From IMG/VR virus record IMGVR_UViG_3300027736_001324, positions 62,001-126,000 of that record: a stretch of 64,000 bases of DNA. One strand, given 5' to 3'. How positions within the stretch are numbered: the first letter of the stretch is position 1; each line of letters starts with the position of its first letter. Position numbers and translations under genes: made by a program. Shown piece by piece: positions 13,831-41,640 of the stretch. The notes under the pieces were generated by a model. The model was given only the letters and a program-made list of their open reading frames with translations. It did no database searches and was not told the DNA's origin.

Positions 13831-13878
13831 TCTTTGTATCCATCTAAATACTCATAGGAGTACTCATGGATACAAAGA
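13831..13878 (+). promoter_or_regulatory. Late promoter (TAAATA 13845-13850) inside a 13-bp perfect inverted repeat that masks the start codon
   Basis: tctttgtatccat (13831-13843) is the reverse complement of atggatacaaaga (13866-13878). Confidence 0.7.
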
Positions 13879-14171
13879 CATTAATAAGTGAAGCTAAAGC
13901 CCGCTTCAATCATAACTCAGCTAAAGCCTATCTAAAAGACAAATACGACAGTAAATTTATTGTTGCTGATCAAAATGGACTTTGGCGCGCCAATCTAGAA
14001 ACCATTAACTTCTTAAATTCTTCTACTGAAGAATGGGTAATACTAATAGACACCTTTGATAATCCAGTTAAAGTAAAACGAGTAGATTTGCTAAGTAAAC
14101 TTTCTGATACTTACAAAATCACAATGGAAGAATGGTATAACGAATGGGCTGAATTAGAGAAGAAAAGATGA
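13866..14171 (+). CDS. Hypothetical protein, first gene of the glycan cluster
   Basis: AGGAG RBS; ATGA overlap with the next gene. Confidence 0.7.
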   Translation: MDTKTLISEAKARFNHNSAKAYLKDKYDSKFIVADQNGLWRANLETINFLNSSTEEWVILIDTFDNPVKVKRVDLLSKLSDTYKITMEEWYNEWAELEKKR

Positions 14172-14974
14172 GTAGAGGCGTATTACTTTTTGCATTCAAT
14201 AGCCCAAAATATAACTACTACAAAATGGCAGTAGCAACTGCTAAACGAGTAAATCACTTTTTGGATCTACCTGTTACAATCGTAACAGATAATGATTCAT
14301 TGCCTGAACAACAAACATATACATTTGATAAGGTTATCATAGCTGATGCTGATAAAACCAATAAAAGAGATTGGGGGATATGGTTCAACAAAGGTAGATA
14401 TCGTGCATATGCATTAAGTCCATATGATGAAACTATATTGCTAGACACAGATTACATGGTCAACTCAGACAAATTATTAAAGACATTTGATTTACTAACA
14501 GACTTTTGCTGCCACGATACTACTAGTTTTATTATGTACCCAAACGCCGAACAAGAACTATTGAGTGGTCGTAGCTTTAACACATTGTGGGCTACTGTAA
14601 TTATGTTTAAGAAAACAAAAAGAGTAGAACAAATATTCAATTGCTTAGAAATGGTTCAAAAGAACTTTGAACATTACTCAAATATACACGGATTCATATC
14701 ATCTACCTTTCGCAACGATTACGGATTGACACTAGCAACAAGAATAGTTAACGGACATCTTACTACTAAAGAAGATGTAATCCCATGGAACTTATTACAT
14801 GTGGGAAAAAACACAGTAGTGTACAGAAACAATGATGATGAATTTAATAATGAATATACAGTAATGTTTGATAATTGGAACCGCGGAAAGATTCGTAAAG
14901 AATATATCACTATCAAAGATACTGATTTTCATGTTATGAACAAAGAAAACTTTATGGAGCTGATAAGTGAATAA
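14168..14974 (+). CDS. Glycosyltransferase-like protein (GT-A fold)
   Basis: 'GVLLFAFN' first strand; 'LSPYDETILLDTD' DxD motif. Confidence 0.6.
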   Translation: MSRGVLLFAFNSPKYNYYKMAVATAKRVNHFLDLPVTIVTDNDSLPEQQTYTFDKVIIADADKTNKRDWGIWFNKGRYRAYALSPYDETILLDTDYMVNSDKLLKTFDLLTDFCCHDTTSFIMYPNAEQELLSGRSFNTLWATVIMFKKTKRVEQIFNCLEMVQKNFEHYSNIHGFISSTFRNDYGLTLATRIVNGHLTTKEDVIPWNLLHVGKNTVVYRNNDDEFNNEYTVMFDNWNRGKIRKEYITIKDTDFHVMNKENFMELISE

Positions 14975-15707
14975 AGGTTTTGTAATAATGGCTCAGGATA
15001 CCGAGAAAACAAGCTATACTAAGTGTGCTGAAACATTAAAGAAAAGTATATTAAGAGTAATGCCAGACGCTAGCATCACTATTATAACTAGTGATATGTT
15101 GCCCTACGGTGATCTAGGTGGCTTTGCAAATGATTGGCAAGTATATGAAGCTAGTCCATATGATTATACAATCAAGTTAGAAGCGGATATGTATATCCCG
15201 CGCAACATAGACCATTGGTGGGATGTACTCAACCACAGAGATGTTGTAGTTTCAAGTACAATTAGAAATTTCATGCAGGAGATATCTGATGTAAGGGTGT
15301 ATCGCAGATTCATTGATGATAACAATTTGCCAGACGTATATAATGCAATCACTTATTTTAAGAAATCTGATGTGGCTAACCAATTCTTTAGTATAGTTAA
15401 AGACATATTTGAGAACTGGGAAGAATACAAAAAGATATTGAAATGCAACCAAACAGAATTAGTTACTACAGACTGGGTTTATTCTATTGCTTGTCATATT
15501 ATGGGAGTAGAAAAAACTACAATGCCTACGTTTAATGAGATGAGCATGGTGCATATGAAAGCATTTGTTAATAATAATGTGACTGAAAACTGGACTGATA
15601 CTTTTGTATATGAATGCTTGCCCGATCAGATTAGAGTACAGACAGTTCCGCAGCAATATCCATTTCACTATCATGTGAAGAACTTTTGTGATAAAATAGT
15701 AATATGA
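14967..15707 (+). CDS. Glycosyltransferase-like protein, paralog of the upstream gene
   Basis: 'KGFVIMAQ'; 'ASPYDYTIKLEAD' (ExD variant); 'HYH' near the C-terminus. Confidence 0.6.
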   Translation: MNKGFVIMAQDTEKTSYTKCAETLKKSILRVMPDASITIITSDMLPYGDLGGFANDWQVYEASPYDYTIKLEADMYIPRNIDHWWDVLNHRDVVVSSTIRNFMQEISDVRVYRRFIDDNNLPDVYNAITYFKKSDVANQFFSIVKDIFENWEEYKKILKCNQTELVTTDWVYSIACHIMGVEKTTMPTFNEMSMVHMKAFVNNNVTENWTDTFVYECLPDQIRVQTVPQQYPFHYHVKNFCDKIVI

Positions 15708-16039
15708 CCGAAGAAGATTATATTATTATTTGGGAAGCACCTAAATTAATACCGCCGGAGTATAGATTATATTATGATGACAAGGGTAAAGTAATTTGCT
15801 ATTCAGGAGATAAATCGGTAGAGGGCAAGTACATTGTTATTGATGCACAAACTTTTGTTGAAGCAAGACCTGATCTAGTGGTTATCGATGAAAAACTATC
15901 CCGTGCTAGACCAAACGCAATGGTAAGTAAATTGATGCCTGACGATAGTGAAGGGGTCACTTGTCATCCAGAAGATATGAGTATAATAGTTGATGATGCC
16001 AATCACATTAAATGGAAATTAAATATATATGAACTCTAA
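15704..16039 (+). CDS. Hypothetical protein
   Basis: Overlaps both neighbours, consistent with translational coupling. Confidence 0.65.
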   Translation: MTEEDYIIIWEAPKLIPPEYRLYYDDKGKVICYSGDKSVEGKYIVIDAQTFVEARPDLVVIDEKLSRARPNAMVSKLMPDDSEGVTCHPEDMSIIVDDANHIKWKLNIYEL

Positions 16040-16979
16040 TATCGTAGATGTGGCAGACTTGGATTGTATCTATCTAAGTTATGATGAGCCACAGAAAGAA
16101 GAATTCTGGCTTAAGATAAAGAACATGGTTCCCTGGGCAAAGCGTGTTGATAGTGTTAAAGGTAGTGATGCCGCACATAAAGCCGCAGCAGAAGAATCTG
16201 ATACCGAAAGATTTATTCTTATTGATGGTGATAATATGCCTAATGAGAATTTCTTTAATATACAATTAGACTTTACTGATAAAGGTTCTGAATATCAGCT
16301 AGCACAATATCGTTGGAAAGCTGTTAATAGTATTAACGGACTACGTTATGGCAATGGCGGCATGAGTAGCTGGACTAAAACTTATGTGCGTGAAATGAAA
16401 ACTCACGAAAATCAAAAAGACGGAGATGTAGCACGTATTGCTGATTTCTGTATGGATGGAAAAGATAATTTATATTGGGCAATGCATGATTGTTATTCTA
16501 CTACTTATCCTAATTATACTCCGTTTCAAGCGTGGCGTGCTGGATTCCGAGAAGGAGTAAAAATGGTTCTTGATAAAGGTGCAAGACCTGATATTGACAC
16601 TTTTAAAGAAACTGTTGCTAGTCGCAACTTAAACAATTTAACAATCTGGCATAACGTAGGTGCTGATGTTGAGAATGGCATGTGGGCTATCTATGGTGCA
16701 AGACTTGGAACATATATGACTATGTTAACTGAGTGGGATCACGCAAATGTTCAATGGTTTGATAACTATATAACACTTTGGGAAGAACAAGAATACAGAG
16801 ATCCAGAACGTGAAGCAACATTGATTGGTGAAGCATTAAATGATAAACTAGGATTGCCAATGTGTACATTGAGTAGCGAACAAAGCAAATTCTTTAAGCG
16901 ACACTATAATGCTGATAAGTACAATATCGGTCCATTGATAAGAGAGATGGATGTAATAAGAAAGATTGAGGGTTGGTAA
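16029..16979 (+). CDS. GT2-like glycosyltransferase-family protein
   Basis: 'IYLSYDEP', 'GSDAAHKAAA', 'FILIDGDN' DxD, 'AWRAGFREGVKM'. Confidence 0.6.
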   Translation: MNSNIVDVADLDCIYLSYDEPQKEEFWLKIKNMVPWAKRVDSVKGSDAAHKAAAEESDTERFILIDGDNMPNENFFNIQLDFTDKGSEYQLAQYRWKAVNSINGLRYGNGGMSSWTKTYVREMKTHENQKDGDVARIADFCMDGKDNLYWAMHDCYSTTYPNYTPFQAWRAGFREGVKMVLDKGARPDIDTFKETVASRNLNNLTIWHNVGADVENGMWAIYGARLGTYMTMLTEWDHANVQWFDNYITLWEEQEYRDPEREATLIGEALNDKLGLPMCTLSSEQSKFFKRHYNADKYNIGPLIREMDVIRKIEGW

Positions 16980-18550
16980 TGAAAAAGCTAGATGATGTAA
17001 TTTGGATAAAAAATAATTCCGGTGATATTGTTTCTAATAAAGAAAATGTAGAAACTGTAAAAAATCTATTAAATGACACTGGATGTGGATTTTGTTTAGC
17101 AAAGTTTACACAAGTCACTATGCATTTGGGTACAGGATTAGTACATTCATGTCATCATCCAAAAGCACATGTTGTGCCATTGGAAGAATTAGAAAATAAC
17201 CCGGCTGCATTGTTTAATACAAGCAAGTTAAAAAAAGCACGAAAACAAATGTTGTCCGGCGAGAAACCAAGTGAGTGTGATTATTGCTGGCGCGTAGAAG
17301 ATAGAAATAGTCCAAGTGACAGATACTTCAAGAGCCTTGAAAATTGGGCATTATCAAGTCATGATATGGTACTTGATAATGGACATGAGATTGATTACTA
17401 TCCTACTTACTTAGAGGTTGACTTTAGCAACGTATGTAATTTTAGCTGTATCTATTGCGGGCCTGAGTATAGTAGCATTTGGGTAGAAGATTTAAAAAGA
17501 AACGGTCCAGTTAAAGTATTAGATAATACAAGCAAGGTACAATGGGTACAGGGATGGCAAGACTTAGATTCTATTACATATAAGAACAGAGAACATAATC
17601 CATATGTTGAAGCATTTTGGAAATGGTTCCCCGATGCATATAAGAAACTTAAGTTTTACCGTATTACGGGTGGAGAGCCATTACTAAGCAAAGAAACATT
17701 TAGAAGTATTGATTGGCTCATTGAGAATCCAAATACTGAATTAGATTTCAGTATTAACAGTAACATGGGTGTACCAGATAAGTTATGGTATTCATTTTTA
17801 GATAAGATAAAAGTATTAGCAAATGGAAATTATGTTAAGAAATTTACCTTGTTTACAAGCGTTGATGCCTGGGGAGAGAAAGCAGAATATCTACGCCCTG
17901 GATTAGATTTTGAATTATTCAAAAAACGATATGAAGAAGTCCTACAAATTGGTGGTGTAAGATGCGTAATCATGTGTACATTTAATCTATTGAGTGTTAC
18001 TAGTATACAAAAGTTATTAGAATGGCAGTCTGAGTTACGAAGCAAATATAATGTTGACAGAGAGTTGTTACATTTAGAAACACAATTTGGTGTTAATCTA
18101 GGTGGAGAAATTTCTCATACTGAAAGAAACAAATTATCCGGTGAGCATTTTGCAATAGTTGGTATTGATATTCCGTATCTGCGTCATCCTCAATGTTTAG
18201 ATGCACATTTCTCGGATAAAAATTTGATTGAGAAATATTTAGTGCCGGCGATTAATTTCATGGCAAAAAACACAGGAAGTTCGCATTGGGGATTACATCA
18301 AGGGTATGAGTCATATGAAGTTGAAAAAATGAAAAGAAATGTATTTGATATAATTCATTTCAATTCAATACATGATGAAGAAAATCCAGTTGTAGTTGAA
18401 GGTAGGGCGAAGTTTTATGATTTTGTTAATGATATGGATAGGCGGCATGGTAAAAATTTCGTAGATGTCTTCCCAGAGTTTAAATCATTTTATGAAAAAT
18501 GTAGACAAAACAAAAACGACATATTAAAAGAGGAACATAAACTACCATGA
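16979..18550 (+). CDS. Radical SAM protein with N-terminal Cys-rich (twitch/SPASM-like) domain
   Basis: CNFSCIYC (CxxxCxxC), 'TGGEPL', N-terminal 'FCLAKF...HSCHH...ECDYCW'. Start taken at the ATG overlapping the upstream TAA. Confidence 0.85.
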   Translation: MKKLDDVIWIKNNSGDIVSNKENVETVKNLLNDTGCGFCLAKFTQVTMHLGTGLVHSCHHPKAHVVPLEELENNPAALFNTSKLKKARKQMLSGEKPSECDYCWRVEDRNSPSDRYFKSLENWALSSHDMVLDNGHEIDYYPTYLEVDFSNVCNFSCIYCGPEYSSIWVEDLKRNGPVKVLDNTSKVQWVQGWQDLDSITYKNREHNPYVEAFWKWFPDAYKKLKFYRITGGEPLLSKETFRSIDWLIENPNTELDFSINSNMGVPDKLWYSFLDKIKVLANGNYVKKFTLFTSVDAWGEKAEYLRPGLDFELFKKRYEEVLQIGGVRCVIMCTFNLLSVTSIQKLLEWQSELRSKYNVDRELLHLETQFGVNLGGEISHTERNKLSGEHFAIVGIDIPYLRHPQCLDAHFSDKNLIEKYLVPAINFMAKNTGSSHWGLHQGYESYEVEKMKRNVFDIIHFNSIHDEENPVVVEGRAKFYDFVNDMDRRHGKNFVDVFPEFKSFYEKCRQNKNDILKEEHKLP

Positions 18551-19323
18551 GAGTAGCATTATGTATTAGTGGTCAGCCTAGAACATGGGAAAAATGCTAT
18601 CAAAATTGGATAGATAGTATTCTTCCCGGCGCAGAGAAAGACGTTTTTTTTCATTTATGGGATTACAATTCATTACCTAGTATAATTAATACTATCCCGG
18701 GCGCACCGACAAACTATAATAAAAAAATATCTGAGGATGAGAAAAATCTAATTGTGGATACATTAAAGCCAAAGAAGCATAAATTTGATAATAAGGAAAT
18801 TCCAAATCGTAGTGATGATCCTAGTTTTATTAATGAATTTGTTAAAACTCCTTTGGGATGGTGGTGCAGAGGACAATATTATAGTTTATGGTATGCTGCT
18901 CAATTAAAACGACAATATGAATTAGAAAATAACTTTGATTATGATGTAGTATTCAGATTGAGAACTGATTTGATTTTTACAGAACCAGTTATATTACCTG
19001 AAAAAGTTGAATATAATTCTATATATTCTACAAATAATGGATGGATGGAAAATGTTGGAACTTTTATGATAGGTGATACTTTTTATTTTGCTGATAGTTT
19101 TACCTACGATCAAATATCTCAATTTATACATGGATTAGATTTTATCGACACATTTAATGTAGTTGATTCACATATAACTTTTCACCCACCTGAAGTTGCG
19201 TTTTATCCTTTTATTAAATCACTTGGAATAAAAAACATAAATTCACCGCAGCATTTTAAAATAGCAAGAACACAAGAATATCTTGACATTAAGAAAGAAT
19301 TAGGTTCGTATGAAATCATATAA
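18547..19323 (+). CDS. Putative glycosyltransferase, 'A(V/L)CxSGxxR' family, paralog 1
   Basis: MRVALCISGQPR...FFHLW...YDVVFRLRTD. Confidence 0.6.
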   Translation: MRVALCISGQPRTWEKCYQNWIDSILPGAEKDVFFHLWDYNSLPSIINTIPGAPTNYNKKISEDEKNLIVDTLKPKKHKFDNKEIPNRSDDPSFINEFVKTPLGWWCRGQYYSLWYAAQLKRQYELENNFDYDVVFRLRTDLIFTEPVILPEKVEYNSIYSTNNGWMENVGTFMIGDTFYFADSFTYDQISQFIHGLDFIDTFNVVDSHITFHPPEVAFYPFIKSLGIKNINSPQHFKIARTQEYLDIKKELGSYEII

Positions 19324-20062
19324 TATTGCTGTTTGTTTTAGTGGTCAAATTAGGACCGGGGTTTATGCTGCACCAAATATAAAAAGATTTATAGGTGATT
19401 TATGGGACAATTGTGATTTTTTTATACACACGTGGAATGTTTCTAATGAAAAGCCTACTCCTAAACAAGCTAAAGATGGAAATATGTTTGGTGATGCGCA
19501 GGAAATAGATTTTGAAACACTTAATAAAATTTATAATTTTAAAAAAATAAACATTACCCCGAGAATTCTATTGGACATGGGACTATGGCTGTCTTGGCTA
19601 CTAAGTGTACATTTAAAACAACAACATGAAATAGAAAATAATAAAAAATATGATTATGTTGTGAAGTTAAGACCTGATATGATTTATCGCAACTCATTAA
19701 CGCTAGATGATATGATTAAAAATACTTCATCTAAATCGGTTTCTGTAATGGAAACTTTTATATACGACGGTGATCAAATTACCGATGATTCATTGTATAT
19801 TGCTGATTCAACAACTATGGATCTATTTGTAAATTTTGTAAATGAATTACCCCATCTAACTCCTCACAAGACACCCCATCATGCTTTATATAATTATGCA
19901 ATAGAACACGGTATCATCATTAATGATTTAAAATGCGGATATTTTTCTGGTAACTACACTATATTAAGACAACCCTGTATATCGTATTGTACGTTGACTG
20001 AATTTGAAAAATGTGAAAAAATGGATAAGTTAATATATTATCCTGGAATGGCTAACAGATAA
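19310..20062 (+). CDS. Putative glycosyltransferase, same family, paralog 2
   Basis: IAVCFSGQIR...FIHTW...YDYVVKLRPD. Confidence 0.6.
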   Translation: MKSYNIAVCFSGQIRTGVYAAPNIKRFIGDLWDNCDFFIHTWNVSNEKPTPKQAKDGNMFGDAQEIDFETLNKIYNFKKINITPRILLDMGLWLSWLLSVHLKQQHEIENNKKYDYVVKLRPDMIYRNSLTLDDMIKNTSSKSVSVMETFIYDGDQITDDSLYIADSTTMDLFVNFVNELPHLTPHKTPHHALYNYAIEHGIIINDLKCGYFSGNYTILRQPCISYCTLTEFEKCEKMDKLIYYPGMANR

Positions 20063-21036: not shown

Positions 21037-21052
21037 CGTAACTGAAAGTAAT

Positions 21053-22724: not shown

Positions 22725-22739
22725 AGCATTATTGTGTAA

Positions 22740-24041: not shown

Positions 24042-24067
24042 ACGAATTTCACTATGTTAAATAACGT

Positions 24068-24096
24068 ATTATACTGTATTTCTGCAATAAAGTCAA
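24068..24096 (-). promoter_or_regulatory. sigma70-type promoter of the lipoprotein gene
   Basis: Minus strand TTGACT-17 nt-TATAAT. Confidence 0.7.
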
Positions 24097-24125
24097 GTGT
24101 CTCGGGTTGCACACTAAATAATACT

Positions 24126-25729: not shown

Positions 25730-26855
25730 CAGGAACACTGATGTAATCACTAATAGTGCAAATCTTGAAGATTTACATGCTGTCACGGATGTTCCTATAT
25801 TGATGAGTTGTACAGCAGAAAAAGAATCAACTGATATTAAGAAAGATTTAATTTGGCAAATAAGTAAAGACTCCGGGATCATACAATTAAAAAATCTCAT
25901 CCCATTGAATGTGCTATATTCCGTGCCTCATAGCGGCACAACAGGTGGAATGTGGTTACAACATCATCAAGAATTTTCTAAATTCTTAAGTAAATTCAAC
26001 CCTACCTCAGTGTTAGAAATTGGCGGAGCACATGGTATATTGGCTACTGATTATTTGAAAAATAATATGATTCCCTGGACTATAATTGAACCTAATCCCT
26101 GCCCAATAGATAAGTGTCTGGCTAAATTTATTAAAAGATTTTTTGATGATAAGTTTTCTGTTAACGAAATTAACGAAAAAATTGACACAATAGTACATAG
26201 TCATGTGTTTGAACATGTTTATGACCCGACGGAATTTATGCAAAACATTTCAAATATAATGCATAACGGTAATAAATTAATATTTACCTTGCCCAATCTA
26301 CAAATTATGTTAGAAAACAAATATACTAACTGTATAAATTTTGAACATACTATTTTCTTGTCTGAACCGTACATAGAATACTTATTATCAAAATTTGGGT
26401 TTCGGGTCATAGAAAAAACATACTTTAGCAATCATAGCATTTTTTATTCAACTGTCAGAGATGATACGGTTGCCCCGTTTGAATTAGATCCCAATCTGTA
26501 TGAACAGAACAAACAACTGTACTTGGACTATGTAAAATATTATGAGGATCTTATAATAGAATTAAATAATAAATCAAAGGATACTACTCTTCCCATTTAT
26601 TTGTTTGGGGCACATGTGTTCTCGCAATATTTGTTAACATTAGGATTGGATAGCACTAAAATTAATAGTATCTTGGATAATGATCCAAAGAAACACGGCA
26701 AGCGTTTATATGGCACTGGTTTGAAAATTCAATCACCTAGTGTACTAAGCAGCGTAGAACCAATGATTGTTATTTTAAAAGCAGGGTTTTATAATGAAGA
26801 AATTAAACAAGATATATTGAAAAACATAAATCCAAATATAATATTTTGGGAATAA
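25716..26855 (+). CDS. Class I SAM-dependent methyltransferase (sugar C-methyltransferase-like)
   Basis: 'VLEIGGAHG', 'HSHVFEH', C-terminal 'LFGA...DND..KHGK.LYG'. Confidence 0.75.
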   Translation: MKLINRNTDVITNSANLEDLHAVTDVPILMSCTAEKESTDIKKDLIWQISKDSGIIQLKNLIPLNVLYSVPHSGTTGGMWLQHHQEFSKFLSKFNPTSVLEIGGAHGILATDYLKNNMIPWTIIEPNPCPIDKCLAKFIKRFFDDKFSVNEINEKIDTIVHSHVFEHVYDPTEFMQNISNIMHNGNKLIFTLPNLQIMLENKYTNCINFEHTIFLSEPYIEYLLSKFGFRVIEKTYFSNHSIFYSTVRDDTVAPFELDPNLYEQNKQLYLDYVKYYEDLIIELNNKSKDTTLPIYLFGAHVFSQYLLTLGLDSTKINSILDNDPKKHGKRLYGTGLKIQSPSVLSSVEPMIVILKAGFYNEEIKQDILKNINPNIIFWE

Positions 26856-26857
26856 AG

Positions 26858-27310
26858 ATGATCACAAAAGATAAAAAGTTAGTTAAAAAACACTGGGGAC
26901 AGGAAGAATGGTTTGCAGATGGAGTAGCTACCCCATTTGCATTGAAACGTATATTGTTCTTAGCTGGGAACAGAACAAGTCTACAAGTGCATCAATATAA
27001 GTTTGAAACAACTTTTGTATTGTCTGGCACTGGCAAATTATATAAGTCTAAAGAACCATTGGATATAGAAAATTTCCTACATGTAGGAATGACCTCTAAG
27101 CAAGTTGAAGAATATGAAGCAACGTTTGATGTACTAGATTTGCATGAGGGTGTTTTATTCGACCTCAGCCCAGGATACGTTCATCGTGTTGTGGCTACTA
27201 CCGACTTAACTTTTATCGAAGCTAGCACTTGTGAATTGGATGATGTATTTCGTTTACAAGATGATGGTGGAAGAACACACGGGCGCATAAGCTACGAACA
27301 TGAAAATTAA
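26858..27310 (+). CDS. Cupin-domain protein (mannose-6-phosphate isomerase type II-like)
   Basis: 'V.K.WG.E', 'TSLQVH..K.ET', 'PGYVHR', 'DDVFRLQD'. Confidence 0.75.
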   Translation: MITKDKKLVKKHWGQEEWFADGVATPFALKRILFLAGNRTSLQVHQYKFETTFVLSGTGKLYKSKEPLDIENFLHVGMTSKQVEEYEATFDVLDLHEGVLFDLSPGYVHRVVATTDLTFIEASTCELDDVFRLQDDGGRTHGRISYEHEN

Positions 27311-28829
27311 TACAGTAATTATACCTACTGCAGGTACAGGTAGTAGAATGGGTAACTATACAAAGAATCTCAACAAAGCATTATTGCCCTATAAAAATAA
27401 ACCAGTGATATCACATATCATTGACAGTTTCCCCCAAGACACAAAATTTATTCTACCAGTTGGTTACTTAGCAGATCAAATCAAAGACTTCTGTAAAATA
27501 GCATATGCTGATAGAGATATTGAATTTGTTCAGATAGATGATTATCTTAGTAGCAAATCAGGCACTTCATATACATTGCGACATTGTAGAGACAAAGTAA
27601 ACGCACCGTTTTGGTATGTGCCGTGTGATACTTATTTTAATGAATCAGTTGTTGACAAAGTAAACGAAAGTAATTGTTACTTTGTAAAAAAAGTTCCAGA
27701 GAAAGACAGCTATCTCTATACTATGTTTGATGTAGATACCAACAAAAATATAACTGAGATAACATTTAAAAAACACACCCCAGAATCATATGAAGCCTTT
27801 ACTGGGTTAATGTACATACATGATTATGTAGAATTCTTTGATAGTTTGGAAACAATCAATTCAACTGAATTAATTTATTCCATACAGTTAGGTGACAAAG
27901 TAGCTAAGTTGGACACTTGGCAAGACTTTGGAGATCCAGTCAACTATCAAACTGAATTGGGGAAAAGTCAAAAGTTTGACTTTAGTAAAAAAGATGAACT
28001 AACCTATATCTGTAACAATCGTGTAGTCAAATGGTGGATAGATGATGCTACCCCAAAAAAGAAATATATTAAGACATTAAAAAATCCCTCTGTATTTCCT
28101 GCTAACTGTCAACACATTGGCAACTTCATGGCTTACGATTACTTTGATGGCCAAACACTATATGAGTATAATAACCCAGTAGCATTTACTTCATATCTTA
28201 ATTGGCTAAAAGATGAAGTTTGGTTGCCAGTTGATGCGGATATTACCAGTGCTGCAACTGAATTCTATAAAAACAAAACACTAGCACGAGTTAATAAGTT
28301 TTTAGAAAAGTACCCAGACCTCAAACAAATTAACTTTATTGATGGTATAAAAGTTAATGATTATAGTTACTACTTGAATAAGATTGATTGGGACTATTTA
28401 AGCACTACCACATTACCAGGGTTTGTGCATGGGGATTTACATTTTGATAATACTGTTATCAATGATGAGGGTAAATTTAAAGTGATAGATTGGAGACATG
28501 AATTTGCTAATATAGTAGAGTATGGGGATATCTATTATGACCTAGCTAAACTAGCAGGTGGATTTATAATCAACTATGCTAACATCAAAGAACATAACTT
28601 CAATATTGAAATAGATAATGATAATGTCACACTAGCTATCCCTAGTGTAGACCATGTTAATGTTTATCAACGTCAACTTAAAGAATTCGTAATAAGTCAG
28701 GGGTACGATTACAAAAAAGTACAAACGCTAATTCCAATTATATATTGGAATATGAGTCCATTACATACTGCGCCATTTGATGTATTCTTATGGTACTTGG
28801 GTATTAAATTGTTCCAAGAATTAGAATGA
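27300..28829 (+). CDS. Nucleotidyltransferase fused to a choline/aminoglycoside kinase-like phosphotransferase
   Basis: N-terminal 'PTAGTGSRM...NKALLP'; C-terminal 'HGDLHFDN', 'VIDW', 'GDIYYDLAKL'. Confidence 0.8.
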   Translation: MKINTVIIPTAGTGSRMGNYTKNLNKALLPYKNKPVISHIIDSFPQDTKFILPVGYLADQIKDFCKIAYADRDIEFVQIDDYLSSKSGTSYTLRHCRDKVNAPFWYVPCDTYFNESVVDKVNESNCYFVKKVPEKDSYLYTMFDVDTNKNITEITFKKHTPESYEAFTGLMYIHDYVEFFDSLETINSTELIYSIQLGDKVAKLDTWQDFGDPVNYQTELGKSQKFDFSKKDELTYICNNRVVKWWIDDATPKKKYIKTLKNPSVFPANCQHIGNFMAYDYFDGQTLYEYNNPVAFTSYLNWLKDEVWLPVDADITSAATEFYKNKTLARVNKFLEKYPDLKQINFIDGIKVNDYSYYLNKIDWDYLSTTTLPGFVHGDLHFDNTVINDEGKFKVIDWRHEFANIVEYGDIYYDLAKLAGGFIINYANIKEHNFNIEIDNDNVTLAIPSVDHVNVYQRQLKEFVISQGYDYKKVQTLIPIIYWNMSPLHTAPFDVFLWYLGIKLFQELE

Positions 28830-29524
28830 AACAATTTTATAGTCTAAGTCAATATCCTGGCAAAACCGGAGAAACTTACTATCGTAAGTTTTTTAATTTA
28901 AAGAATTTGCCACACTCTTACAATGCATTAAAATGCGAAAATATAGTTGATAGTGTTACTGAATTAAAAAATATTAAAGCTAGTGGGTTCAGTGTCAGTA
29001 TGCCCTACAAGGCATCAGTCATACCTTTACTTGATGAAGTGGATAATTTAGTTACACAATTCAATAGTTGTAACACAGTAGTGAACGTCGACGGAAAGTA
29101 TATTGGTTACAATGCTGATTACTATGGGGCAATACATGTACTAAAAACTATCCTAGAACATGAACCAATTAACATATTGGGCAACGGTGCAATGGGCAAT
29201 ATGTTTAAAAAAATACTAGGTTCTAGGGCTAACATCTACAGTCGTTCATTGGGCAATTGGGACCAAATACAATCATTATCTGGAACTATAATAAACTGTA
29301 CTAGTTTAGGTACCTCTACTAAGGATAGTCCCTTCATTAAGTTGCCAAATATAAGCCATGTGATTGACTTGGCTATGAATGACAATGATTTAAAAAAACA
29401 AACCATCTCATCTGATATTAAATATATAGGCGGAAAAGAGTTTTACCAGCAGCAATTCAAAAAACAATTTGAAATTTACACCGGTATAACATTAAGCCAA
29501 TCAGAACTTGAAGATGATAATTAA
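28826..29524 (+). CDS. Shikimate dehydrogenase (AroE)-like oxidoreductase
   Basis: 'GFSVSMPYK', 'CNTV', 'GYNAD', 'ILGNGAMG', 'INCTSLG'. Confidence 0.75.
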   Translation: MKQFYSLSQYPGKTGETYYRKFFNLKNLPHSYNALKCENIVDSVTELKNIKASGFSVSMPYKASVIPLLDEVDNLVTQFNSCNTVVNVDGKYIGYNADYYGAIHVLKTILEHEPINILGNGAMGNMFKKILGSRANIYSRSLGNWDQIQSLSGTIINCTSLGTSTKDSPFIKLPNISHVIDLAMNDNDLKKQTISSDIKYIGGKEFYQQQFKKQFEIYTGITLSQSELEDDN

Positions 29525-29999
29525 TAAATTAGTTTTAGACGTTGACGGAGTACTTAACACCGGGCATATTTTATATAGCAGTCAGGGTAAGATGTATAAA
29601 GTCTTTGGTCCACACGACAAAGATGGATTCAAAATAATAAAAAAATATCTAAATGATATTACCTTTATCACAGCAGATGTGACTGGCTGGGATATAACCT
29701 ACGCCCGAATAGTAAACGATTGGAAGTATGATCCTTCACAATTAATATTGGTTACAGAAGAAGATCGTATGAGATGGTTTGAAAAGAATTGTGATTTTGA
29801 AACTACAGCATATATAGCAGACGGATACAATGATGCCCCTATACTAGATAGAGTTAAAGTTGGCATTGCACCCAAATCAGCAAGAATAGAAGCAAGATCA
29901 GCAGCAATATATGTAACACCTTCAAAAGCAGGACAAGGTGCTGTGTTAGATGCTTGCTTATACTTAGAAAGATTAATTAATGGACTTGAAGAAATTTAA
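29514..29999 (+). CDS. HAD phosphatase, KdsC-like
   Basis: 'LDVDGVL', 'K.F..HD..G', 'YIADGYND', 'AGQGAV'. Confidence 0.8.
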   Translation: MIINKLVLDVDGVLNTGHILYSSQGKMYKVFGPHDKDGFKIIKKYLNDITFITADVTGWDITYARIVNDWKYDPSQLILVTEEDRMRWFEKNCDFETTAYIADGYNDAPILDRVKVGIAPKSARIEARSAAIYVTPSKAGQGAVLDACLYLERLINGLEEI

Positions 30000-30996
30000 A
30001 TTGGGCGTGGGCCCTATGAGTCCAGAAGTAGTTGATATTTGTTTGGAATACAGCAAGGTACATAATTTTCCAATTATGATTATTGCTAGTAGAAATCAAG
30101 TTGATGCTAATAATGGATATTCATTTACCACTGAGAAATTAGTAGATTTTGTCAAATCTAATACAAACTATGATCCTGAAAGAATACTTATATGCAGAGA
30201 TCATTGCGGACCATACTACGGTGATGTTGACACTGGCTTATCAGTAGAGGATGCACTAAAGAATTGTATCAACACAATTGATTCTGACGTTAAGAATGGA
30301 TTTAATTTGATACATGTGGATATCAGCAGAGTAGCTAAAGAAGAAAGATACACAATAGCACACGAAATTATCAATTACATTTTGAAATTGAATCCCAATA
30401 TTATGTTAGAATTTGGTAGTGAGGACAATCTTAGCGTAGAAGAAAACAACAATCAAATACATTATGATGTTGAGTTTAGTAGACGCTATCTAAATCAGAT
30501 TAAATTTGTTGTTGGTCGTACAGGTAGTCTCACTAAACATAAACAAGTGGGTCATTTTGATGTGGAAGATAATATCAAACTAGCAGAGGTTATACACAAG
30601 CATGGATTCTTATTTAAAGAACATAATGCTGATTACTTAACTGAACAAGATATTGTATTAAGAAAACAAGCCGGAGTAGATTCGTTAAATATTGCACCAC
30701 AATTAGGAGTGGTACATACTAATGTACTTGTTAAGTTAGGTAAAGAATTTGAGGATGAGTATAATACATTTAAGAAATCTGTAATTGAAAAAGAAGTATG
30801 GAAGAAATGGATTACTCCTGAGATAACAGATGACGAAACTAAGTTATCAGTAAGCGGACATTATTTCTTAAACACAGTTGAAGCCAAACAGTTGTTAGAA
30901 AAAATTGATATAGCAAAGTTTAAAAATGTTTTGAAAACAGAGATATTTGAAGTACTTGATATATATAGAAAAGGACTTGGCAATGAGCATACTTAA
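29980..30996 (+). CDS. GatZ/KbaZ-family (tagatose-bisphosphate aldolase subunit / tagatose-6-P epimerase-like) TIM-barrel enzyme
   Basis: 'IASRNQVD...GY', 'RDHCGP', 'GFNLIHVD', 'KEHNADY', 'NIAPQLG'. Confidence 0.7.
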   Translation: MDLKKFKLGVGPMSPEVVDICLEYSKVHNFPIMIIASRNQVDANNGYSFTTEKLVDFVKSNTNYDPERILICRDHCGPYYGDVDTGLSVEDALKNCINTIDSDVKNGFNLIHVDISRVAKEERYTIAHEIINYILKLNPNIMLEFGSEDNLSVEENNNQIHYDVEFSRRYLNQIKFVVGRTGSLTKHKQVGHFDVEDNIKLAEVIHKHGFLFKEHNADYLTEQDIVLRKQAGVDSLNIAPQLGVVHTNVLVKLGKEFEDEYNTFKKSVIEKEVWKKWITPEITDDETKLSVSGHYFLNTVEAKQLLEKIDIAKFKNVLKTEIFEVLDIYRKGLGNEHT

Positions 30997-31108
30997 AAAA
31001 ATTAAATACTTCATTGTAGAACGATTGTTTGGTAAAATTACCAGAGAATTGCGCTATAGAAAAAGATTAAAAGAATTACGCAAACGAGACCCGTTTATTT
31101 ACAAATGA
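30983..31108 (+). CDS. Small basic 41-aa protein ending RKRDPFIYK, not in the ORF track
   Basis: AAGGA RBS; ATGA-coupled to the carbamoyltransferase gene. Confidence 0.65.
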   Translation: MSILKKIKYFIVERLFGKITRELRYRKRLKELRKRDPFIYK

Positions 31109-32586
31109 ACTATATAGGTATAAGTGCCGGTTTTCATGACGCTGCAATCAGCGTAGTTGATGACCATGGCAACATCTTGTTTGCTGGACATAGTGAACGC
31201 TATAGTAAGAATAAGCATGACAAAGATGTATGTGAAGAATTATTAACGGATGCATTAAAGCACACTAATTCATCATACTTAGAGTATCATTACTATGAAC
31301 GCCCGTGGTTAAAGTCATTACGTCAATTACGCACTGGTGAAGGCTTTACTTGGCCGTCATGGGAAAAGATATTAGGTAGTACATATCATCAGATGGGTAC
31401 ACCTAAAATACATACACATAGTCATCATCTATGTCATGCGGCTGCAGGATTTCAAACAAGTCCATTTGAAGATGCCACTGTTGTTGTGATTGATGCTATA
31501 GGAGAATTTGATACTATCACTATCTGGGATGCTTGGTACGATTTCTCAACGGGCAAAGCACAATACAAAAAACTATGGAGTCTTAAATATCCAGATAGCA
31601 TTGGATTATTCTATTCAGCAATGACTGAACGAGTTGGACTACGCCCATTAGATGAAGAATACATTCTAATGGGTATGGCTGCGTACGGAGAACCTAATCA
31701 TGTTGCTGATATGATTAATGAGTTAGTAGATAAAAAAGATATATTAACCTTCAAGCAAAATCTACACACTGGGGTTAGTAAAGATTTCTTAAAAGATGCT
31801 GATCCATTGGACATTGCTAGCAGTAGTCAACACTTAGTTGAGTACATGATTACTAGAGTAATGAGTAAAGCTAGAACATTGGGTCGTAGTAGAAATCTAG
31901 TATACGGCGGCGGGGTAGCATTGAATTGTTTAGCGAACAGACTATTAGGGAACTTCTATGAAAATATTTGGATTATGCCTAACCCTGGCGATGCGGGTAA
32001 TAGTCTCGGTGCAGCATGTCTTGGGCACAGTCGTAAAACTAATTGGACTGATGCTTTTCTTGGTCATAACATTCCTGGTAAGTATCCTGTTAACGGTTTA
32101 CTTGATGTGTTACTTACTGATAGGATTGTTGGTGTCGCTTCAGGACGAGCAGAGTTCGGCCCGAGAGCATTGGGAAATAGAAGTCTACTCGCAGACCCAA
32201 GAGGCGATGAAATTAAAGATAAAGTAAATGAGATTAAACGTAGACAAAAGTTTAGACCATTTGCTCCTGTCATATTAGAAGAATATGCTCATCAGTATTT
32301 TGAAATGCCTAAGCACTGGCATGATAGTAGATATATGCAGGTTATTAGTAAATGTAAATATCCTGAGAAATTCCCTGCTATTGCACATCACGATTGGACT
32401 AGTAGAGTACAAACTGTACCAAAAGATGGGTCTGGCATCAGAGAGTTATTAGAAAAATGGTATGTAATGACCGAATGCCCAATGTTATTGAACACAAGTT
32501 TAAACATACGTGGCGAGCCAATGGTCAACGACCATAGTGATGCTGATAGGTTTGAAAAACTATATGGAGTTAAGGTTTTGTCATAA
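31105..32586 (+). CDS. O-carbamoyltransferase (NodU/CmcH family)
   Basis: 'HDAA', 'ER...KH', 'HHLCHAA', 'GGVALNC', 'EFGPRALGNRS', 'RPFAP', 'LNTSLN.RGEP'. Confidence 0.92.
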   Translation: MNYIGISAGFHDAAISVVDDHGNILFAGHSERYSKNKHDKDVCEELLTDALKHTNSSYLEYHYYERPWLKSLRQLRTGEGFTWPSWEKILGSTYHQMGTPKIHTHSHHLCHAAAGFQTSPFEDATVVVIDAIGEFDTITIWDAWYDFSTGKAQYKKLWSLKYPDSIGLFYSAMTERVGLRPLDEEYILMGMAAYGEPNHVADMINELVDKKDILTFKQNLHTGVSKDFLKDADPLDIASSSQHLVEYMITRVMSKARTLGRSRNLVYGGGVALNCLANRLLGNFYENIWIMPNPGDAGNSLGAACLGHSRKTNWTDAFLGHNIPGKYPVNGLLDVLLTDRIVGVASGRAEFGPRALGNRSLLADPRGDEIKDKVNEIKRRQKFRPFAPVILEEYAHQYFEMPKHWHDSRYMQVISKCKYPEKFPAIAHHDWTSRVQTVPKDGSGIRELLEKWYVMTECPMLLNTSLNIRGEPMVNDHSDADRFEKLYGVKVLS

Positions 32587-39360: not shown

Positions 39361-39507
39361 ATGTTTATTGGGTTAATGGGTGTTGATAATGATGGCAAAA
39401 CCATGTATACTCCAAATGGTAATAAGATATGGTTCACATTGCCATGGGGACTAGCGTGGAAATTACAAGAGATACAACATTGGATCGCTAAGAAAACTTG
39501 GCGATAA
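39361..39507 (+). CDS. Small 48-aa hypothetical protein (MFIGLMGVD...)
   Basis: Strong AAGGAG RBS. Confidence 0.6.
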   Translation: MFIGLMGVDNDGKTMYTPNGNKIWFTLPWGLAWKLQEIQHWIAKKTWR

Positions 39508-39514
39508 ATAGTAG

Positions 39515-39818: not shown

Positions 39819-39832
39819 TTAAGTTAATACGT

Positions 39833-41601: not shown

Positions 41602-41640
41602 AATTCAATAACTAAATATTTGTGTAACAAAGGAGATTAC

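What the first reader, a model, noticed from the sequence alone, without database searches (positions are those of the whole stretch)
13866..32586. ~19 kb late glycan-synthesis and tailoring cluster directly downstream of the tail-fibre genes
Seen: about eight GT-like genes, two SGNH proteins, a radical SAM enzyme, a methyltransferase, a sugar-nucleotide block and a carbamoyltransferase, mostly translationally coupled and preceded by late motifs. Inference: late timing and position favour glycosylation of virion proteins (the neighbouring proteins are very Ser/Thr/Asn-rich) over DNA modification. This would resemble giant-virus fibril glycosylation. Host-surface modification is the alternative.
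Basis: inference. Interest (0 to 1): 0.68.

Follow-up and report, generated by a model that had tools for sequence, protein, structure and literature searches.

The report
Phage glycan-building operon beside tail fibres
A freshwater jumbo phage carries, right after its tail-fibre genes, a late-type operon of about nine sugar-transferase-like genes and a sugar-making cassette. A five-gene core is shared by many related phages, while the cassette differs from strain to strain, so it most likely coats virion proteins with a variable glycan, though this is unproven.

Summary
Positions 13866-32586 encode two GT8 (glycogenin-like) paralogs, one GT-A enzyme with an invariant DxD, five DUF7796 paralogs with a GT6-like GT-A fold, two SGNH-like DUF6071 proteins and an N-twitch radical SAM enzyme. 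They also encode a C-methyltransferase, a sugar-activation block and a carbamoyltransferase. Nearly all genes overlap, and T4-late-like motifs sit at 13844 and 24114.

Three things are new.
- The cluster has two layers. A core (small protein, GT8, GT8, small protein, GT-A, rSAM) keeps its order after a tail-fibre gene in more than 50 viral contigs and in the cultured Ralstonia phage RsoM2USA. Positions 18547-32586 are a swappable cassette: relatives hold other sugar genes there, or nothing.
- The system extends to 38639. The 2014-aa protein has about 20 tandem 66-aa repeats plus a degenerate paralog of the core GT-A domain.
- One lipoprotein gene lies on the opposite strand.

Virion-protein glycosylation is the best reading (about 0.5). 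The supporting points are the late-type promoter, the fixed link to fibre genes, the absence of any membrane or export component, and the absence of a hydroxymethylase or TET (ThyA is canonical). Host-envelope or DNA targets are not excluded. No glycan has been measured.

The parts
10968..11588 (+). Conserved structural (baseplate/tail-region) protein; context, not part of the enzymes
   Evidence: phrog_11259 E=1.5e-67. It is 46-53% identical to proteins of Atu_ph07, Phosso and Rak2-like jumbo phages, one of them annotated as baseplate protein. It is syntenic in relatives.
11620..12870 (+). Tail fibre with a C-terminal intramolecular-chaperone (autoproteolytic) domain; candidate glycan acceptor
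   Evidence: Peptidase_G2 IMC domain. N-terminus matches virion structural phrog_14394. Ser+Thr+Asn 32.9%. It has 18 NxS/T against 9.1+-2.4 in shuffles. It lies upstream of the GT module in more than 40 loci and in RsoM2USA.
12880..13818 (+). Thr-rich (19% T) fibre-like protein; candidate acceptor
   Evidence: Composition and sequence. Conserved only in the closer relatives. CTAAATA lies 17 nt upstream.
13844..13851 (+). T4-late-like promoter motif CTAAATAC at the head of the operon
   Evidence: Lies 22 nt before the ATG. It is conserved as TCTAAATAC or TATAAATAC in 8 relatives while the flanks vary.
13866..14171 (+). Small conserved protein of the core module (101 aa), function unknown
   Evidence: 48-65% identical in 9 loci at the same position. 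No family hit.
14168..14974 (+). GT8-like (glycogenin-like) GT-A glycosyltransferase a
   Evidence: Profile against PDB hits only glycogenin, E=0.025. DxD is invariant, 34/34. More than 1296 homologs in metagenomes.
14967..15707 (+). GT8-like glycosyltransferase b (paralog; ExD here)
   Evidence: hhalign against the GT8a family: probability 99.9, E=1.5e-31. Profile against glycogenin-1: E=1.2e-6.
15704..16039 (+). Small protein of the core module (111 aa), function unknown
   Evidence: Syntenic in 9 loci. No family hit.
16029..16979 (+). GT-A1: N-terminal GT-A domain (DxD) plus a C-terminal helical domain
   Evidence: AF2 pLDDT 83. BFVD and Atlas relatives are almost all viral. There are 50 invariant columns, including D66 and D68.
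16973..18550 (+). N-terminal-twitch radical SAM enzyme
   Evidence: NF033640 at 294 bits, cut-off 170. Invariant CX3CX2C (C155, C159, C162) and four N-terminal Cys (C41, C60, C102, C105).
18547..21036 (+). Three DUF7796 paralogs (18547-19323, 19310-20062, 20062-21036): GT6-like GT-A fold with RxD instead of DxD
   Evidence: phrog_13607. Alignment, model, Foldseek GT6 hits, Atlas DUF7796.
21053..22724 (+). Two SGNH-like DUF6071 proteins (21053-21850; 21840-22724, ORF opens at 21780)
   Evidence: DUF6071 E=6e-12 and 4.5e-14. Invariant GDSW..G, N, G and HP blocks. Weak top PDB hits are CE2 acetyl-xylan esterases.
22740..24041 (-). FG-GAP/VCBS lipoprotein-like gene on the opposite strand (moron-like insert)
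   Evidence: FG-GAP_3 E=6e-14. Signal peptide plus Cys. A sigma70-like site with 11/12 matches lies at 24096-24068. Absent in L002/L007.
24114..24120 (+). Second late-like motif CTAAATA, 12 nt before the likely true start (ATG 24126) of the next DUF7796 gene
   Evidence: The N-terminal 24 aa of ORF 24054 are unmatched in the family alignment.
24126..25729 (+). Two more DUF7796 paralogs (24126-24905, 24902-25729)
   Evidence: phrog_13607..
25716..26855 (+). SAM-dependent methyltransferase with the C-terminal domain of sugar C-methyltransferases
   Evidence: Methyltransf_23 E=2.6e-14 and Methyltransf_14 E=1.5e-6. 40% identical to a gene in the glycan cluster of Synechococcus phage S-SKS1.
26846..27310 (+). 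Cupin (putative sugar isomerase or epimerase)
   Evidence: Weak Cupin_2 / MannoseP_isomer hits. phrog_7851.
27300..28829 (+). Fusion of a sugar-1-phosphate nucleotidyltransferase and an APH-fold kinase
   Evidence: NTP_transf_3 and APH. Arch_glmU 1e-16, AglF and HddC. PDB hits are LicC and RmlA.
28826..29524 (+). Shikimate-dehydrogenase-like NAD(P) oxidoreductase
   Evidence: Shikimate_dh_N E=2.3e-12. All NCBIfam hits are below cut-off.
29508..29999 (+). KdsC-like HAD sugar-phosphate phosphatase
   Evidence: TIGR01670 E=2.8e-16, below cut-off.
29980..30996 (+). Class II aldolase / GatZ-KbaZ-like TIM-barrel protein
   Evidence: PF08013 E=7e-16, N-terminal third only. PDB 2fiq E=5e-6.
31105..32586 (+). 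NodU/CmcH-type O-carbamoyltransferase
   Evidence: Carbam_trans_N 132 bits and Carbam_trans_C 162 bits, both above cut-off. phrog_1601 E=5e-94.
32595..38639 (+). 2014-aa protein: about 20 tandem 66-aa repeats (FDF[ST]WRPDP..YIYxWGNK..) plus a C-terminal GT-A2 domain, paralogous to 16029-16979 but lacking DxD.
   Evidence: Repeats. BLASTP against g16029 gives 1e-10. Counterparts lie directly after the rSAM in L085 (812 aa) and RsoM2USA_348. The DxD and SYDEP motifs are kept in RsoM2USA, L028 and L013 and lost here and in L085. Repeat number varies from 1 to 20 among relatives.

Best explanation
This is a virus-encoded, cytoplasmic glycosylation system. It is expressed with the late structural genes and most likely decorates virion proteins: the adjacent tail-fibre proteins or the giant fibre-like protein.

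The conserved core would install and extend a basal glycan on a soluble acceptor. The core comprises two GT8 glycogenin-like transferases, a DxD GT-A enzyme with a helical domain, a second GT-A paralog and an N-twitch radical SAM enzyme.

The cassette inserted between the rSAM and the GT-A2 protein would elaborate the glycan in a strain-specific way.
- It supplies an activated unusual sugar through aldolase-like, KdsC-like phosphatase, dehydrogenase and kinase-nucleotidyltransferase steps.
- A cupin and a C-methyltransferase would then tailor the sugar.
- Five GT6-like DUF7796 transferases would add further sugars.
- The SGNH proteins would add or remove O-acyl groups, and the NodU-type enzyme would O-carbamoylate.

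Shown here: the folds and families, the gene order, the conservation of the core, the variability of the cassette, the promoter-like motif, and the lack of membrane parts. Inferred: late expression, the order of the steps, the identity of the sugar and, above all, the acceptor.
For: - Families and folds.
- The core module keeps its order directly after a fibre gene with an IMC domain in more than 50 IMG/VR loci whose GT8 identity falls to 22-30%, and in the cultured phage RsoM2USA.
- Different sugar cassettes occupy the same slot in relatives. L005 has RmlC, a TPP-E1 fragment, three SDRs and a DUF6071. L004 has an SDR and an FkbM methyltransferase. L039 has three rSAMs. L085 and RsoM2USA have none. 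This pattern is typical of exposed glycans under diversifying selection.
- The late-like motif is enriched (P=3e-10), sits before the terminase and fibre genes and at 13844 and 24114, and is conserved in relatives. A gp55-like ORF is present.
- No protein in the cluster has a TM-grade hydrophobic segment, and none resembles a flippase, polymerase or polyprenyl-phosphate transferase.
- No hydroxymethylase or TET is found: ThyA passes the equivalog cut-off.
- The GT-A1 family is 97-100% viral in the Atlas.
- Precedents: glycoproteins were detected in virions of the related jumbo phage XacN1 (PMC5852040). Megavirinae fibril clusters are late and clade-specific (PMC10117803). Mycobacteriophage capsid and tail-tube proteins carry glycans (cited in PMC12619734).
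Against: - No glycan, glycopeptide or transcript has been observed for this phage or for RsoM2USA. The only 'RNA' run is probably DNA.
- Synteny with fibre genes may simply reflect shared descent of a conserved structural region.
- Ser/Thr/Asn-rich fibres are ordinary.
- The late-like motif also precedes the porin-like and PstS genes, so 'late' is an analogy to T4, not a measurement.
- The GT8 family also includes LPS-core transferases that need no membrane domain.
- Relatives of the kinase-nucleotidyltransferase serve next to the DNA polymerase and a thymidylate-synthase-family gene in the T4-like phage Marfa.
- The record is only 69% complete.
- XacN1 lacks this module.
Confidence: 0.5

Rival explanations
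1. Host-envelope modification. The transferases act at the cytoplasmic face on LPS core, lipid-linked O-antigen or capsule intermediates. This would change the infected cell's surface, for superinfection exclusion or to stop progeny sticking to debris.
For: GT8 is the family of LPS-core alpha-glycosyltransferases (established knowledge), and both GT8 profiles hit only GT8 structures. A strain-variable sugar cassette resembles O-antigen loci. An envelope lipoprotein gene sits inside the island. Cellular homologs of the rSAM lie beside GT2, SGNH and methyltransferase genes.
Against: There is no initiating phosphoglycosyltransferase, flippase, polymerase, ligase or ABC exporter, and no TM-grade segment. 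The late-type promoter and the position in the fibre operon leave little time for surface remodelling. The core is fixed to fibre genes across very divergent phages that presumably have different hosts.
Confidence: 0.15
2. DNA hypermodification. The transferases glycosylate modified bases in phage DNA to evade restriction, and the cassette supplies the sugar donor.
For: GT-A-fold DNA glycosyltransferases exist in phages (bioRxiv 10.1101/2023.12.21.572611). A homolog of the kinase-nucleotidyltransferase lies next to the DNA polymerase, a phosphoheptose isomerase and a thymidylate-synthase-family gene in the T4-like Klebsiella phage Marfa. Diversifying cassettes would also fit an arms race with restriction systems.
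Against: The only thymidylate-synthase-family protein passes the ThyA equivalog cut-off (348 against 327 bits). No Tet_JBP was found, but the search is uninformative because the family also failed to ring in any control genome. The cluster is in the late structural operon, far from the replication genes. The best structural matches are protein- or polysaccharide-directed GTs; JGT was not in the libraries searched.
Confidence: 0.08
3. Synthesis of a soluble glycoside or another non-virion product. Examples are a modified nucleotide-sugar or small glycoconjugate acting on host metabolism or on competitors, or glycosylation of a non-structural phage or host protein.
For: C-methyltransferase, cupin, nucleotidyltransferase and carbamoyltransferase together recall deoxysugar tailoring in antibiotic pathways such as noviose. 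This comes from my own knowledge and is a lead only. The rSAM family is concentrated in predatory Bdellovibrionota. The enzymes of RsoM2USA were not among its abundant virion proteins (PMC8504454), which leaves the target open.
Against: There is no aglycone-synthesis or export gene in the cluster. Nine GT-like domains suggest a polymer or oligosaccharide rather than a single glycoside. Fixed linkage to fibre genes is unexplained on this reading.
Confidence: 0.12

Closest known systems
Megavirinae (Mimivirus-group) fibril glycosylation gene clusters
   Same: Virus-encoded clusters of 6-33 genes combine nucleotide-sugar pathways and glycosyltransferases. They are expressed late, they decorate surface fibrils, and their content is clade-specific (PMC10117803). 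Here too there are clustered GTs, a sugar pathway, a late-type promoter, and a cassette that differs between relatives.
   Different: The Megavirinae are eukaryote-infecting viruses with different enzyme families (amino-sugar pathways). Here there is a GT8/GT-A/rSAM core, DUF7796 transferases, a carbamoyltransferase and SGNH proteins. Glycans were chemically shown there and not here.
Mycobacteriophage virion glycosylation (Che8-type; Freeman et al. 2023, as summarised in PMC12619734)
   Same: Phage-encoded glycosyltransferases modify structural proteins. A Che8 glycosyltransferase is among the weak structural matches of GT-A1 (E 1.5e-3).
   Different: Those phages have two to four GT genes in small siphoviruses of actinobacteria, and the glycans are on capsid and tail-tube C-termini. 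They have no rSAM, no sugar-synthesis cassette, no repeat protein, and no detectable sequence relationship to this module.
Chlorovirus PBCV-1 capsid glycosylation (A64R)
   Same: The A64R GT-A domain is a high-probability structural match of GT-A1 (PDB 2p6w/2p73; probability 1.0, Z about 8.4 over 141 residues). It is a cytoplasmic, virus-encoded protein glycosyltransferase.
   Different: Only the generic GT-A domain is shared, at 9-17% identity. The virus, host and gene context differ.
Phage DNA sugar hypermodification (T4 alpha/beta-GT; 5hmC glycans; arabinosyl-hmC-type pathways)
   Same: Phage GTs are combined with donor-sugar supply genes, and a kinase-nucleotidyltransferase homolog is used in that context in phage Marfa.
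   Different: Those systems need a hydroxymethylase or TET and sit among replication and nucleotide genes. Here ThyA is canonical, no TET is found, and the cluster is in the fibre operon.
Bacterial O-antigen/capsule loci and serine-rich-repeat adhesin glycosylation
   Same: There is a conserved frame with swappable sugar cassettes. GT8 enzymes extend protein O-glycans on SRR adhesins, and an inactive GT paralog (GtfB) assists an active one. This comes from my own knowledge. The degenerate GT-A2 domain here could play a similar non-catalytic role.
   Different: There is no lipid carrier, flippase or polymerase here, and no GT4 GtfA/B pair. The relationship is one of logic, not of sequence.
Ralstonia phage RsoM2USA ORF348-354 (all annotated hypothetical)
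   Same: It is the only cultured phage found with the core: two GT8-like genes, GT-A1 (39% identity), rSAM (35%) and GT-A2, in the same order after a fibre-like gene.
   Different: It has no cassette and no repeat expansion, and its GT-A2 keeps DxD. Nothing is known of its function (PMC8504454).

Membership tests
GT8 (glycogenin / LPS alpha-glycosyltransferase family) | Significant sequence similarity to GT8 members | tested here: inconclusive
   The profile of the 14967 family hits glycogenin-1 at E=1.2e-6. The 14168 family reaches only E=0.025. Neither single protein reaches any Pfam model, including Glyco_transf_8. The two families are clearly homologous to each other.
GT8 (glycogenin / LPS alpha-glycosyltransferase family) | GT-A fold with a DxD metal-binding motif | tested here: met
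   DxD is invariant in the 14168 family (34/34). The 14967 family has D/E-x-D in most members, and ExD in this phage. The fold itself was not modelled for these two.
GT8 (glycogenin / LPS alpha-glycosyltransferase family) | Retaining transfer from a UDP-sugar | not testable with these tools
   Needs an enzyme assay.
GT6 (ABO / alpha3GalT / BoGT6a) | GT-A fold superimposable on GT6 structures | tested here: met
   Foldseek E=1e-6, probability 1.0, TM 0.42-0.50 over about 260 columns, and the top 20+ hits are all GT6. Model pLDDT is 82.
GT6 (ABO / alpha3GalT / BoGT6a) | DxD (or NxN in bacterial members) at the donor site, and sequence membership | tested here: not met
   The family has an invariant R-x-D instead. 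There is no sequence hit to GT6 in the PDB or Pfam. It is best filed as its own family, DUF7796 / phrog_13607, with a GT6-like fold.
GT-A glycosyltransferases (GT2-like) for 16029-16979 | Rossmann-like GT-A domain with DxD | tested here: met
   Z 9.3, rmsd 3.2 and 145 aligned residues against B4GALNT1. There are many other GT-A hits, with a few nucleotidyltransferases of the same fold class among them. D66xD68 is invariant in 35 sequences.
SGNH hydrolase superfamily | Conserved blocks with catalytic Ser (GDS), Gly, Asn and His | tested here: met
   Invariant G7, S9, G13, N63/N71, G101 and H268 in 10 sequences. DUF6071 hits are above cut-off. PDB profile hits to CE2 esterases are only weak (E 0.1-0.4). 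The block V Asp is not conserved.
Radical SAM, N-terminal twitch subfamily (NF033640) | CX3CX2C cluster motif, an auxiliary-cluster Cys set, and a score above the curated cut-off | tested here: met
   294.3 bits against a cut-off of 170. C155, C159 and C162 plus C41, C60, C102 and C105 are invariant in 19 sequences.
NodU/CmcH carbamoyltransferases | Both Carbam_trans_N and Carbam_trans_C domains above the gathering score | tested here: met
   132 and 161.6 bits against cut-offs of 24 and 27. The NodU equivalog is far below its cut-off, so the substrate is not that of NodU.
Virus-encoded virion glycosylation systems | Virus-encoded GTs plus a donor-sugar pathway in one cluster | tested here: met
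Virus-encoded virion glycosylation systems | Late expression together with structural genes | tested here: inconclusive
   Only the promoter-like motif and the operon structure are available. No RNA data exist.
Virus-encoded virion glycosylation systems | Glycan covalently bound to virion proteins | not testable with these tools
   Needs purified virions and glycoproteomics.
Phage DNA sugar hypermodification | An enzyme making the acceptor base (dCMP/dUMP hydroxymethylase or a TET/JBP dioxygenase) | tested here: not met
   There is a single PF00303 protein, and it is a canonical ThyA. No Tet_JBP was found. The record is 69% complete, and the Tet_JBP control rang nowhere, so this is not final.
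O-antigen / capsule biosynthesis loci | Initiating polyprenyl-phosphate transferase and Wzx/Wzy or an ABC exporter (membrane proteins) | tested here: not met
   No such Pfam or NCBIfam hits. The maximum 19-residue hydropathy of the enzymes is at most 1.52, and only the minus-strand lipoprotein has a signal peptide.

The most novel reading that the evidence does not exclude
A widespread lineage of aquatic and soil jumbo phages owns an O-antigen-like 'serotype' system for its own virion. A fixed five-gene core includes a radical SAM enzyme and a glycogenin-like pair that primes fibre proteins. A hot-swappable sugar cassette sits at one locus. A repeat-expanded pseudo-glycosyltransferase acts as scaffold or ruler. 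Together these would give each strain a different fibre glycan that tunes adsorption or shields it from host or predator recognition.
Probability: 0.3. Interest if true: 0.8.

Novelty: new variant of a known kind. Interest (0 to 1): 0.6.

Why it matters
Glycosylated virions are well documented for giant viruses and for a few actinobacteriophages, but hardly at all for phages of Gram-negative bacteria. This module is abundant: more than 1296 homologs of one GT8 gene, 228 viral contigs with the rSAM, and many lake metagenomes. It is entirely unannotated in the one cultured carrier, RsoM2USA.

If it glycosylates fibres, it adds a strain-variable layer to host recognition and to phage-defence interplay. 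It would also provide a set of new enzyme families with testable substrates: DUF7796 transferases with RxD, an N-twitch rSAM linked to sugars, and a repeat-bearing pseudo-GT. The core-plus-cassette layout gives a direct handle: RsoM2USA can be used to test the core alone.

Tried and rejected
- Megablast of the region against 50,697 phage records found nothing.
- Single-sequence or profile PDB searches gave nothing usable for GT-A1, DUF7796, the rSAM or the 66-aa repeat.
- Protein-Atlas look-ups returned only viral hypothetical clusters.
- The sigma70 and terminator scan showed no enrichment.
- The sequencing-run search found freshwater and lake DNA runs only. The one 'RNA' run is probably DNA. 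Laying contigs (5,951 letters, within the operators' limit) showed only strain microdiversity, so there is no expression evidence.
- The 'moraphage' paper (PMC12619734) describes a different, Bacteroidota-linked lineage. I could not tie it to this phage.
- XacN1, whose virions contain glycoproteins, lacks this module, so it is a precedent and not a test.
- g10968 is not the homolog of the RsoM2USA virion protein ORF356.
- NxS/T sequons are enriched in fibre 11620, but this may reflect its beta-helix repeats. I do not use it as evidence.
- The identity of the sugar made by the aldolase/phosphatase/dehydrogenase/kinase block could not be resolved. Kdo-like, tagatose-like and noviose-like routes were considered and none is supported.

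Full report
**Setting**

The window is bases 62001-126000 of a 263.7-kb IMG/VR virus record judged 69% complete. Its large terminase is 48-50% identical to those of PA5oct, Sinorhizobium phage Phosso and Rak2-like jumbo myoviruses. Near-identical DNA occurs in freshwater and lake metagenomes. Nothing in the cultured-phage collection matches the region at the DNA level.

**Checking the observation**

Between 13866 and 32586 there are 21 ORFs. Twenty are on the plus strand, and about 16 of 19 same-strand junctions overlap by 1-20 nt.

Family scans directly confirm most of the listed enzymes:
- The N-twitch radical SAM enzyme hits NF033640 at 294 bits, cut-off 170.
- Two DUF6071 proteins are present.
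- The methyltransferase carries the C-terminal domain of sugar C-methyltransferases.
- The sugar block comprises a cupin, an NTP-transferase/APH-kinase fusion, a shikimate-dehydrogenase-like protein, a KdsC-like phosphatase and a GatZ/KbaZ-like aldolase-fold protein.

The eight 'GT-like' genes have no Pfam hit, so I tested them separately.
- **GT8 pair.** Profiles built from homologs in related contigs show that 14168-14974 and 14967-15707 are paralogs (hhalign probability 99.9). In the PDB they match only glycogenin, a GT8 enzyme (E=1.2e-6 and 0.025). DxD is invariant in the first family.
- **GT-A1.** An AlphaFold model of 16029-16979 (pLDDT 83) has an N-terminal GT-A domain. It matches RmlT, TarS/TarP, SunS, B4GALNT1 and the PBCV-1 capsid glycosyltransferase A64R. 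DxD is invariant, and the C-terminal half is helical.
- **DUF7796.** A model of 18547-19323, representing five paralogs, reaches pLDDT 82. It matches GT6 enzymes over its whole length (E 1e-6, probability 1). The family carries an invariant RxD in place of DxD.

The DUF6071 pair keeps the Ser, Gly, Asn and His blocks of SGNH hydrolases.

First, the cluster has two layers. I scanned viral contigs with the rSAM and ran tblastn with all window proteins against the loci found. The order small protein, GT8a, GT8b, small protein, GT-A1, rSAM is kept in more than 50 loci, directly after homologs of 10968 and of the fibre gene 11620. This holds even where GT8 identity falls to 22-30%. The same order exists in Ralstonia phage RsoM2USA, the only cultured phage with the rSAM or GT-A1, where every gene is annotated 'hypothetical protein'.

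By contrast, 18547-32586 is present in only a few relatives.
- In a 345-kb relative, the rSAM is followed at once by the homolog of the next large gene.
- In other relatives the same slot holds other sugar genes. L005 has RmlC, a TPP-dependent E1 fragment, three SDR epimerase/dehydratases and a DUF6071. L004 has an SDR and an FkbM methyltransferase. L039 has three further rSAM enzymes.
- GC content drops to 29-31% in parts of the island.

Second, the system extends to 38639. The 2014-aa product of 32595-38639 has about 20 tandem 66-aa repeats (FDF[ST]WRPDP..YIYxWGNK..). Its C-terminal domain is paralogous to GT-A1. This GT-A2 protein follows the rSAM in RsoM2USA (ORF348) and in other relatives, where it keeps the SYDEP and DxD motifs. 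In this phage and its close relative the motifs are lost. Repeat number ranges from 1 to 20 between relatives.

Third, 22740-24041 is a minus-strand FG-GAP lipoprotein gene. The best sigma70-like site of the region lies just upstream of it, and the gene is absent from the closest relatives.

**Timing**

The motif [AC]TAAATA occurs 27 times on the plus strand. Thirteen of these lie within 60 nt upstream of a gene start, against 1.4 expected (P=3e-10). The genes preceded include the terminase, 58931, and the fibre genes 11620 and 12880.

- One copy sits 22 nt before 13866. It is conserved as TCTAAATAC or TATAAATAC in eight relatives whose flanks differ.
- A second sits 12 nt before the probable true start (24126) of the gene that follows the reversed lipoprotein gene.
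- The motif resembles the T4 late promoter TATAAATA (established knowledge). The genome has a weak gp55-like ORF (E=1.2e-5).
- The motif also precedes the porin-like and PstS genes.
- No transcript data exist.

'Late' is therefore a reasonable inference, not an observation.

**The acceptor**

Four lines favour virion proteins.
1. The core is linked to a tail-fibre gene across deep divergence. The fibre carries a Peptidase_G2 intramolecular-chaperone domain.
2. Every enzyme is soluble, and nothing resembles an initiating lipid-carrier transferase, flippase, polymerase or exporter.
3. The genome's only thymidylate-synthase-family protein is a canonical ThyA, and no TET/JBP enzyme is found.
4. 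Cassette swapping at a fixed slot is the behaviour expected of an exposed, selected glycan.

There are precedents. Glycoproteins were detected in virions of the jumbo phage XacN1 (PMC5852040), although XacN1 lacks this module. Megavirinae fibril clusters are late and clade-specific (PMC10117803). Mycobacteriophage capsid and tail-tube proteins are glycosylated (as cited in PMC12619734).

Several points count against certainty.
- Synteny can be inherited rather than functional.
- GT8 also includes LPS-core enzymes.
- A homolog of the kinase-nucleotidyltransferase works in a DNA-polymerase neighbourhood in phage Marfa.
- The genome is incomplete.
- The enzymes' RsoM2USA counterparts were, as expected for enzymes, not among its abundant virion proteins. 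That study did not look for glycans (PMC8504454).

I put virion-protein glycosylation at about 0.5, host-envelope modification at 0.15, another soluble or non-virion product at 0.12, and DNA at 0.08.

**Likely mechanism (inferred)**

The GT8 pair and GT-A1/GT-A2 build a basal glycan on a cytoplasmic acceptor before or during fibre assembly. The rSAM performs a radical step on a sugar.
- In cellular genomes the rSAM family is concentrated in Bdellovibrionota, beside GT2, GDSL/SGNH, methyltransferase and further rSAM genes.
- It occasionally lies beside homologs of the cupin, the kinase-nucleotidyltransferase, the aldolase-like protein and the carbamoyltransferase.
- This points to glycan chemistry rather than peptide chemistry.

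The cassette makes and activates a rare sugar through the aldolase-fold enzyme, the phosphatase, the dehydrogenase, the anomeric kinase and the nucleotidyltransferase. The cupin and the C-methyltransferase would tailor it. The five DUF7796 transferases add residues. The SGNH and carbamoyltransferase enzymes decorate hydroxyls. In this lineage the repeat-bearing, catalytically degenerate GT-A2 protein may act as a non-catalytic scaffold or acceptor-binding partner. That idea is speculative and was not tested.

**Comparison and novelty**

The system works like the giant-virus and mycobacteriophage virion glycosylation systems, but it shares only generic GT-A folds with them. Three things appear to be undescribed:
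- the conserved GT8/GT8/GT-A/rSAM/GT-A core;
- the RxD DUF7796 transferases;
- the single hot-swap slot.

No paper mentions DUF7796, and the RsoM2USA genes are all hypothetical. I rate the finding a new variant of a known kind, of moderate to high interest. It is directly testable in RsoM2USA.

Noticed in passing
window 39488-39860 (+): A permuted (two-piece) tmRNA gene with tag peptide ANDELFALAA is called by ARAGORN. Permuted tmRNAs are typical of alpha- and some beta-proteobacteria and cyanobacteria, so this may hint at the host.
   Followed up: partly
window 40651-41535 and 41620-42636 (+): A Porin_4/PorB-like outer-membrane porin gene and a full-length PstS phosphate-binding protein gene (429 bits) are present. 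Both are preceded by the CTAAATA motif. They are likely auxiliary host-like genes.
   Followed up: partly
window 22740-24041 (-), promoter-like site 24096-24068: An FG-GAP/VCBS lipoprotein-like gene is inserted on the opposite strand inside the glycan island. The best sigma70-like site of the region (TTGACT-17-TATAAT) lies just upstream. The gene is absent from the closest relatives. An FG-GAP gene also neighbours the rSAM homolog in a Bacteriovoracales genome (L111).
   Followed up: partly
window 32595-38639 (+): There are about 20 tandem 66-aa repeats, with copy number 1-20 among relatives (7 in L004, 4 in L075/L077, 1 in L085). The repeat has no match in Pfam or the PDB and its function is unknown.
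   Followed up: partly
window 51997-52908 and 53159-54175 (+): A canonical thymidylate synthase lies about 250 nt upstream of an SDR sugar epimerase/dehydratase (dTDP-glucose 4,6-dehydratase-like). The SDR could feed the glycan pathway from outside the cluster.
   Followed up: no
G000:C1:39557-39829 (-), outside the window: A 314-aa ORF has weak similarity to the T4 late sigma factor gp55 (E=1.2e-5, 27% over 93 residues).
   Followed up: no
L092, L100, L101 (genome contigs): Contigs binned as Fischerella and Neomarinimicrobiota MAGs (up to 335 kb) carry the fibre gene, both GT8 genes, GT-A1 and the rSAM in phage order. They are probably mis-binned jumbo-phage contigs.
   Followed up: partly
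L087-L163 (genome contigs): Cellular homologs of the N-twitch rSAM (33-40% identity) are overwhelmingly in predatory Bdellovibrionota, sometimes two per genome. Their neighbours include GT2, GDSL/SGNH+TPR, methyltransferase, SPASM/rSAM and HTTM genes.
   Followed up: partly
L083 (Klebsiella phage Marfa 24629-26293): A 554-aa homolog of the nucleotidyltransferase-kinase fusion lies between the DNA polymerase and a phosphoheptose isomerase, a thymidylate kinase and a thymidylate-synthase-family gene. This looks like a DNA-sugar modification context.
   Followed up: no
window 229-10800 (+); L085 1-6628: A giant Thr-rich (13.8% T) structural-like protein of 3523 aa is encoded here. Its homolog in a 345-kb relative is 6241 aa, so its length is highly variable.
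   Followed up: no
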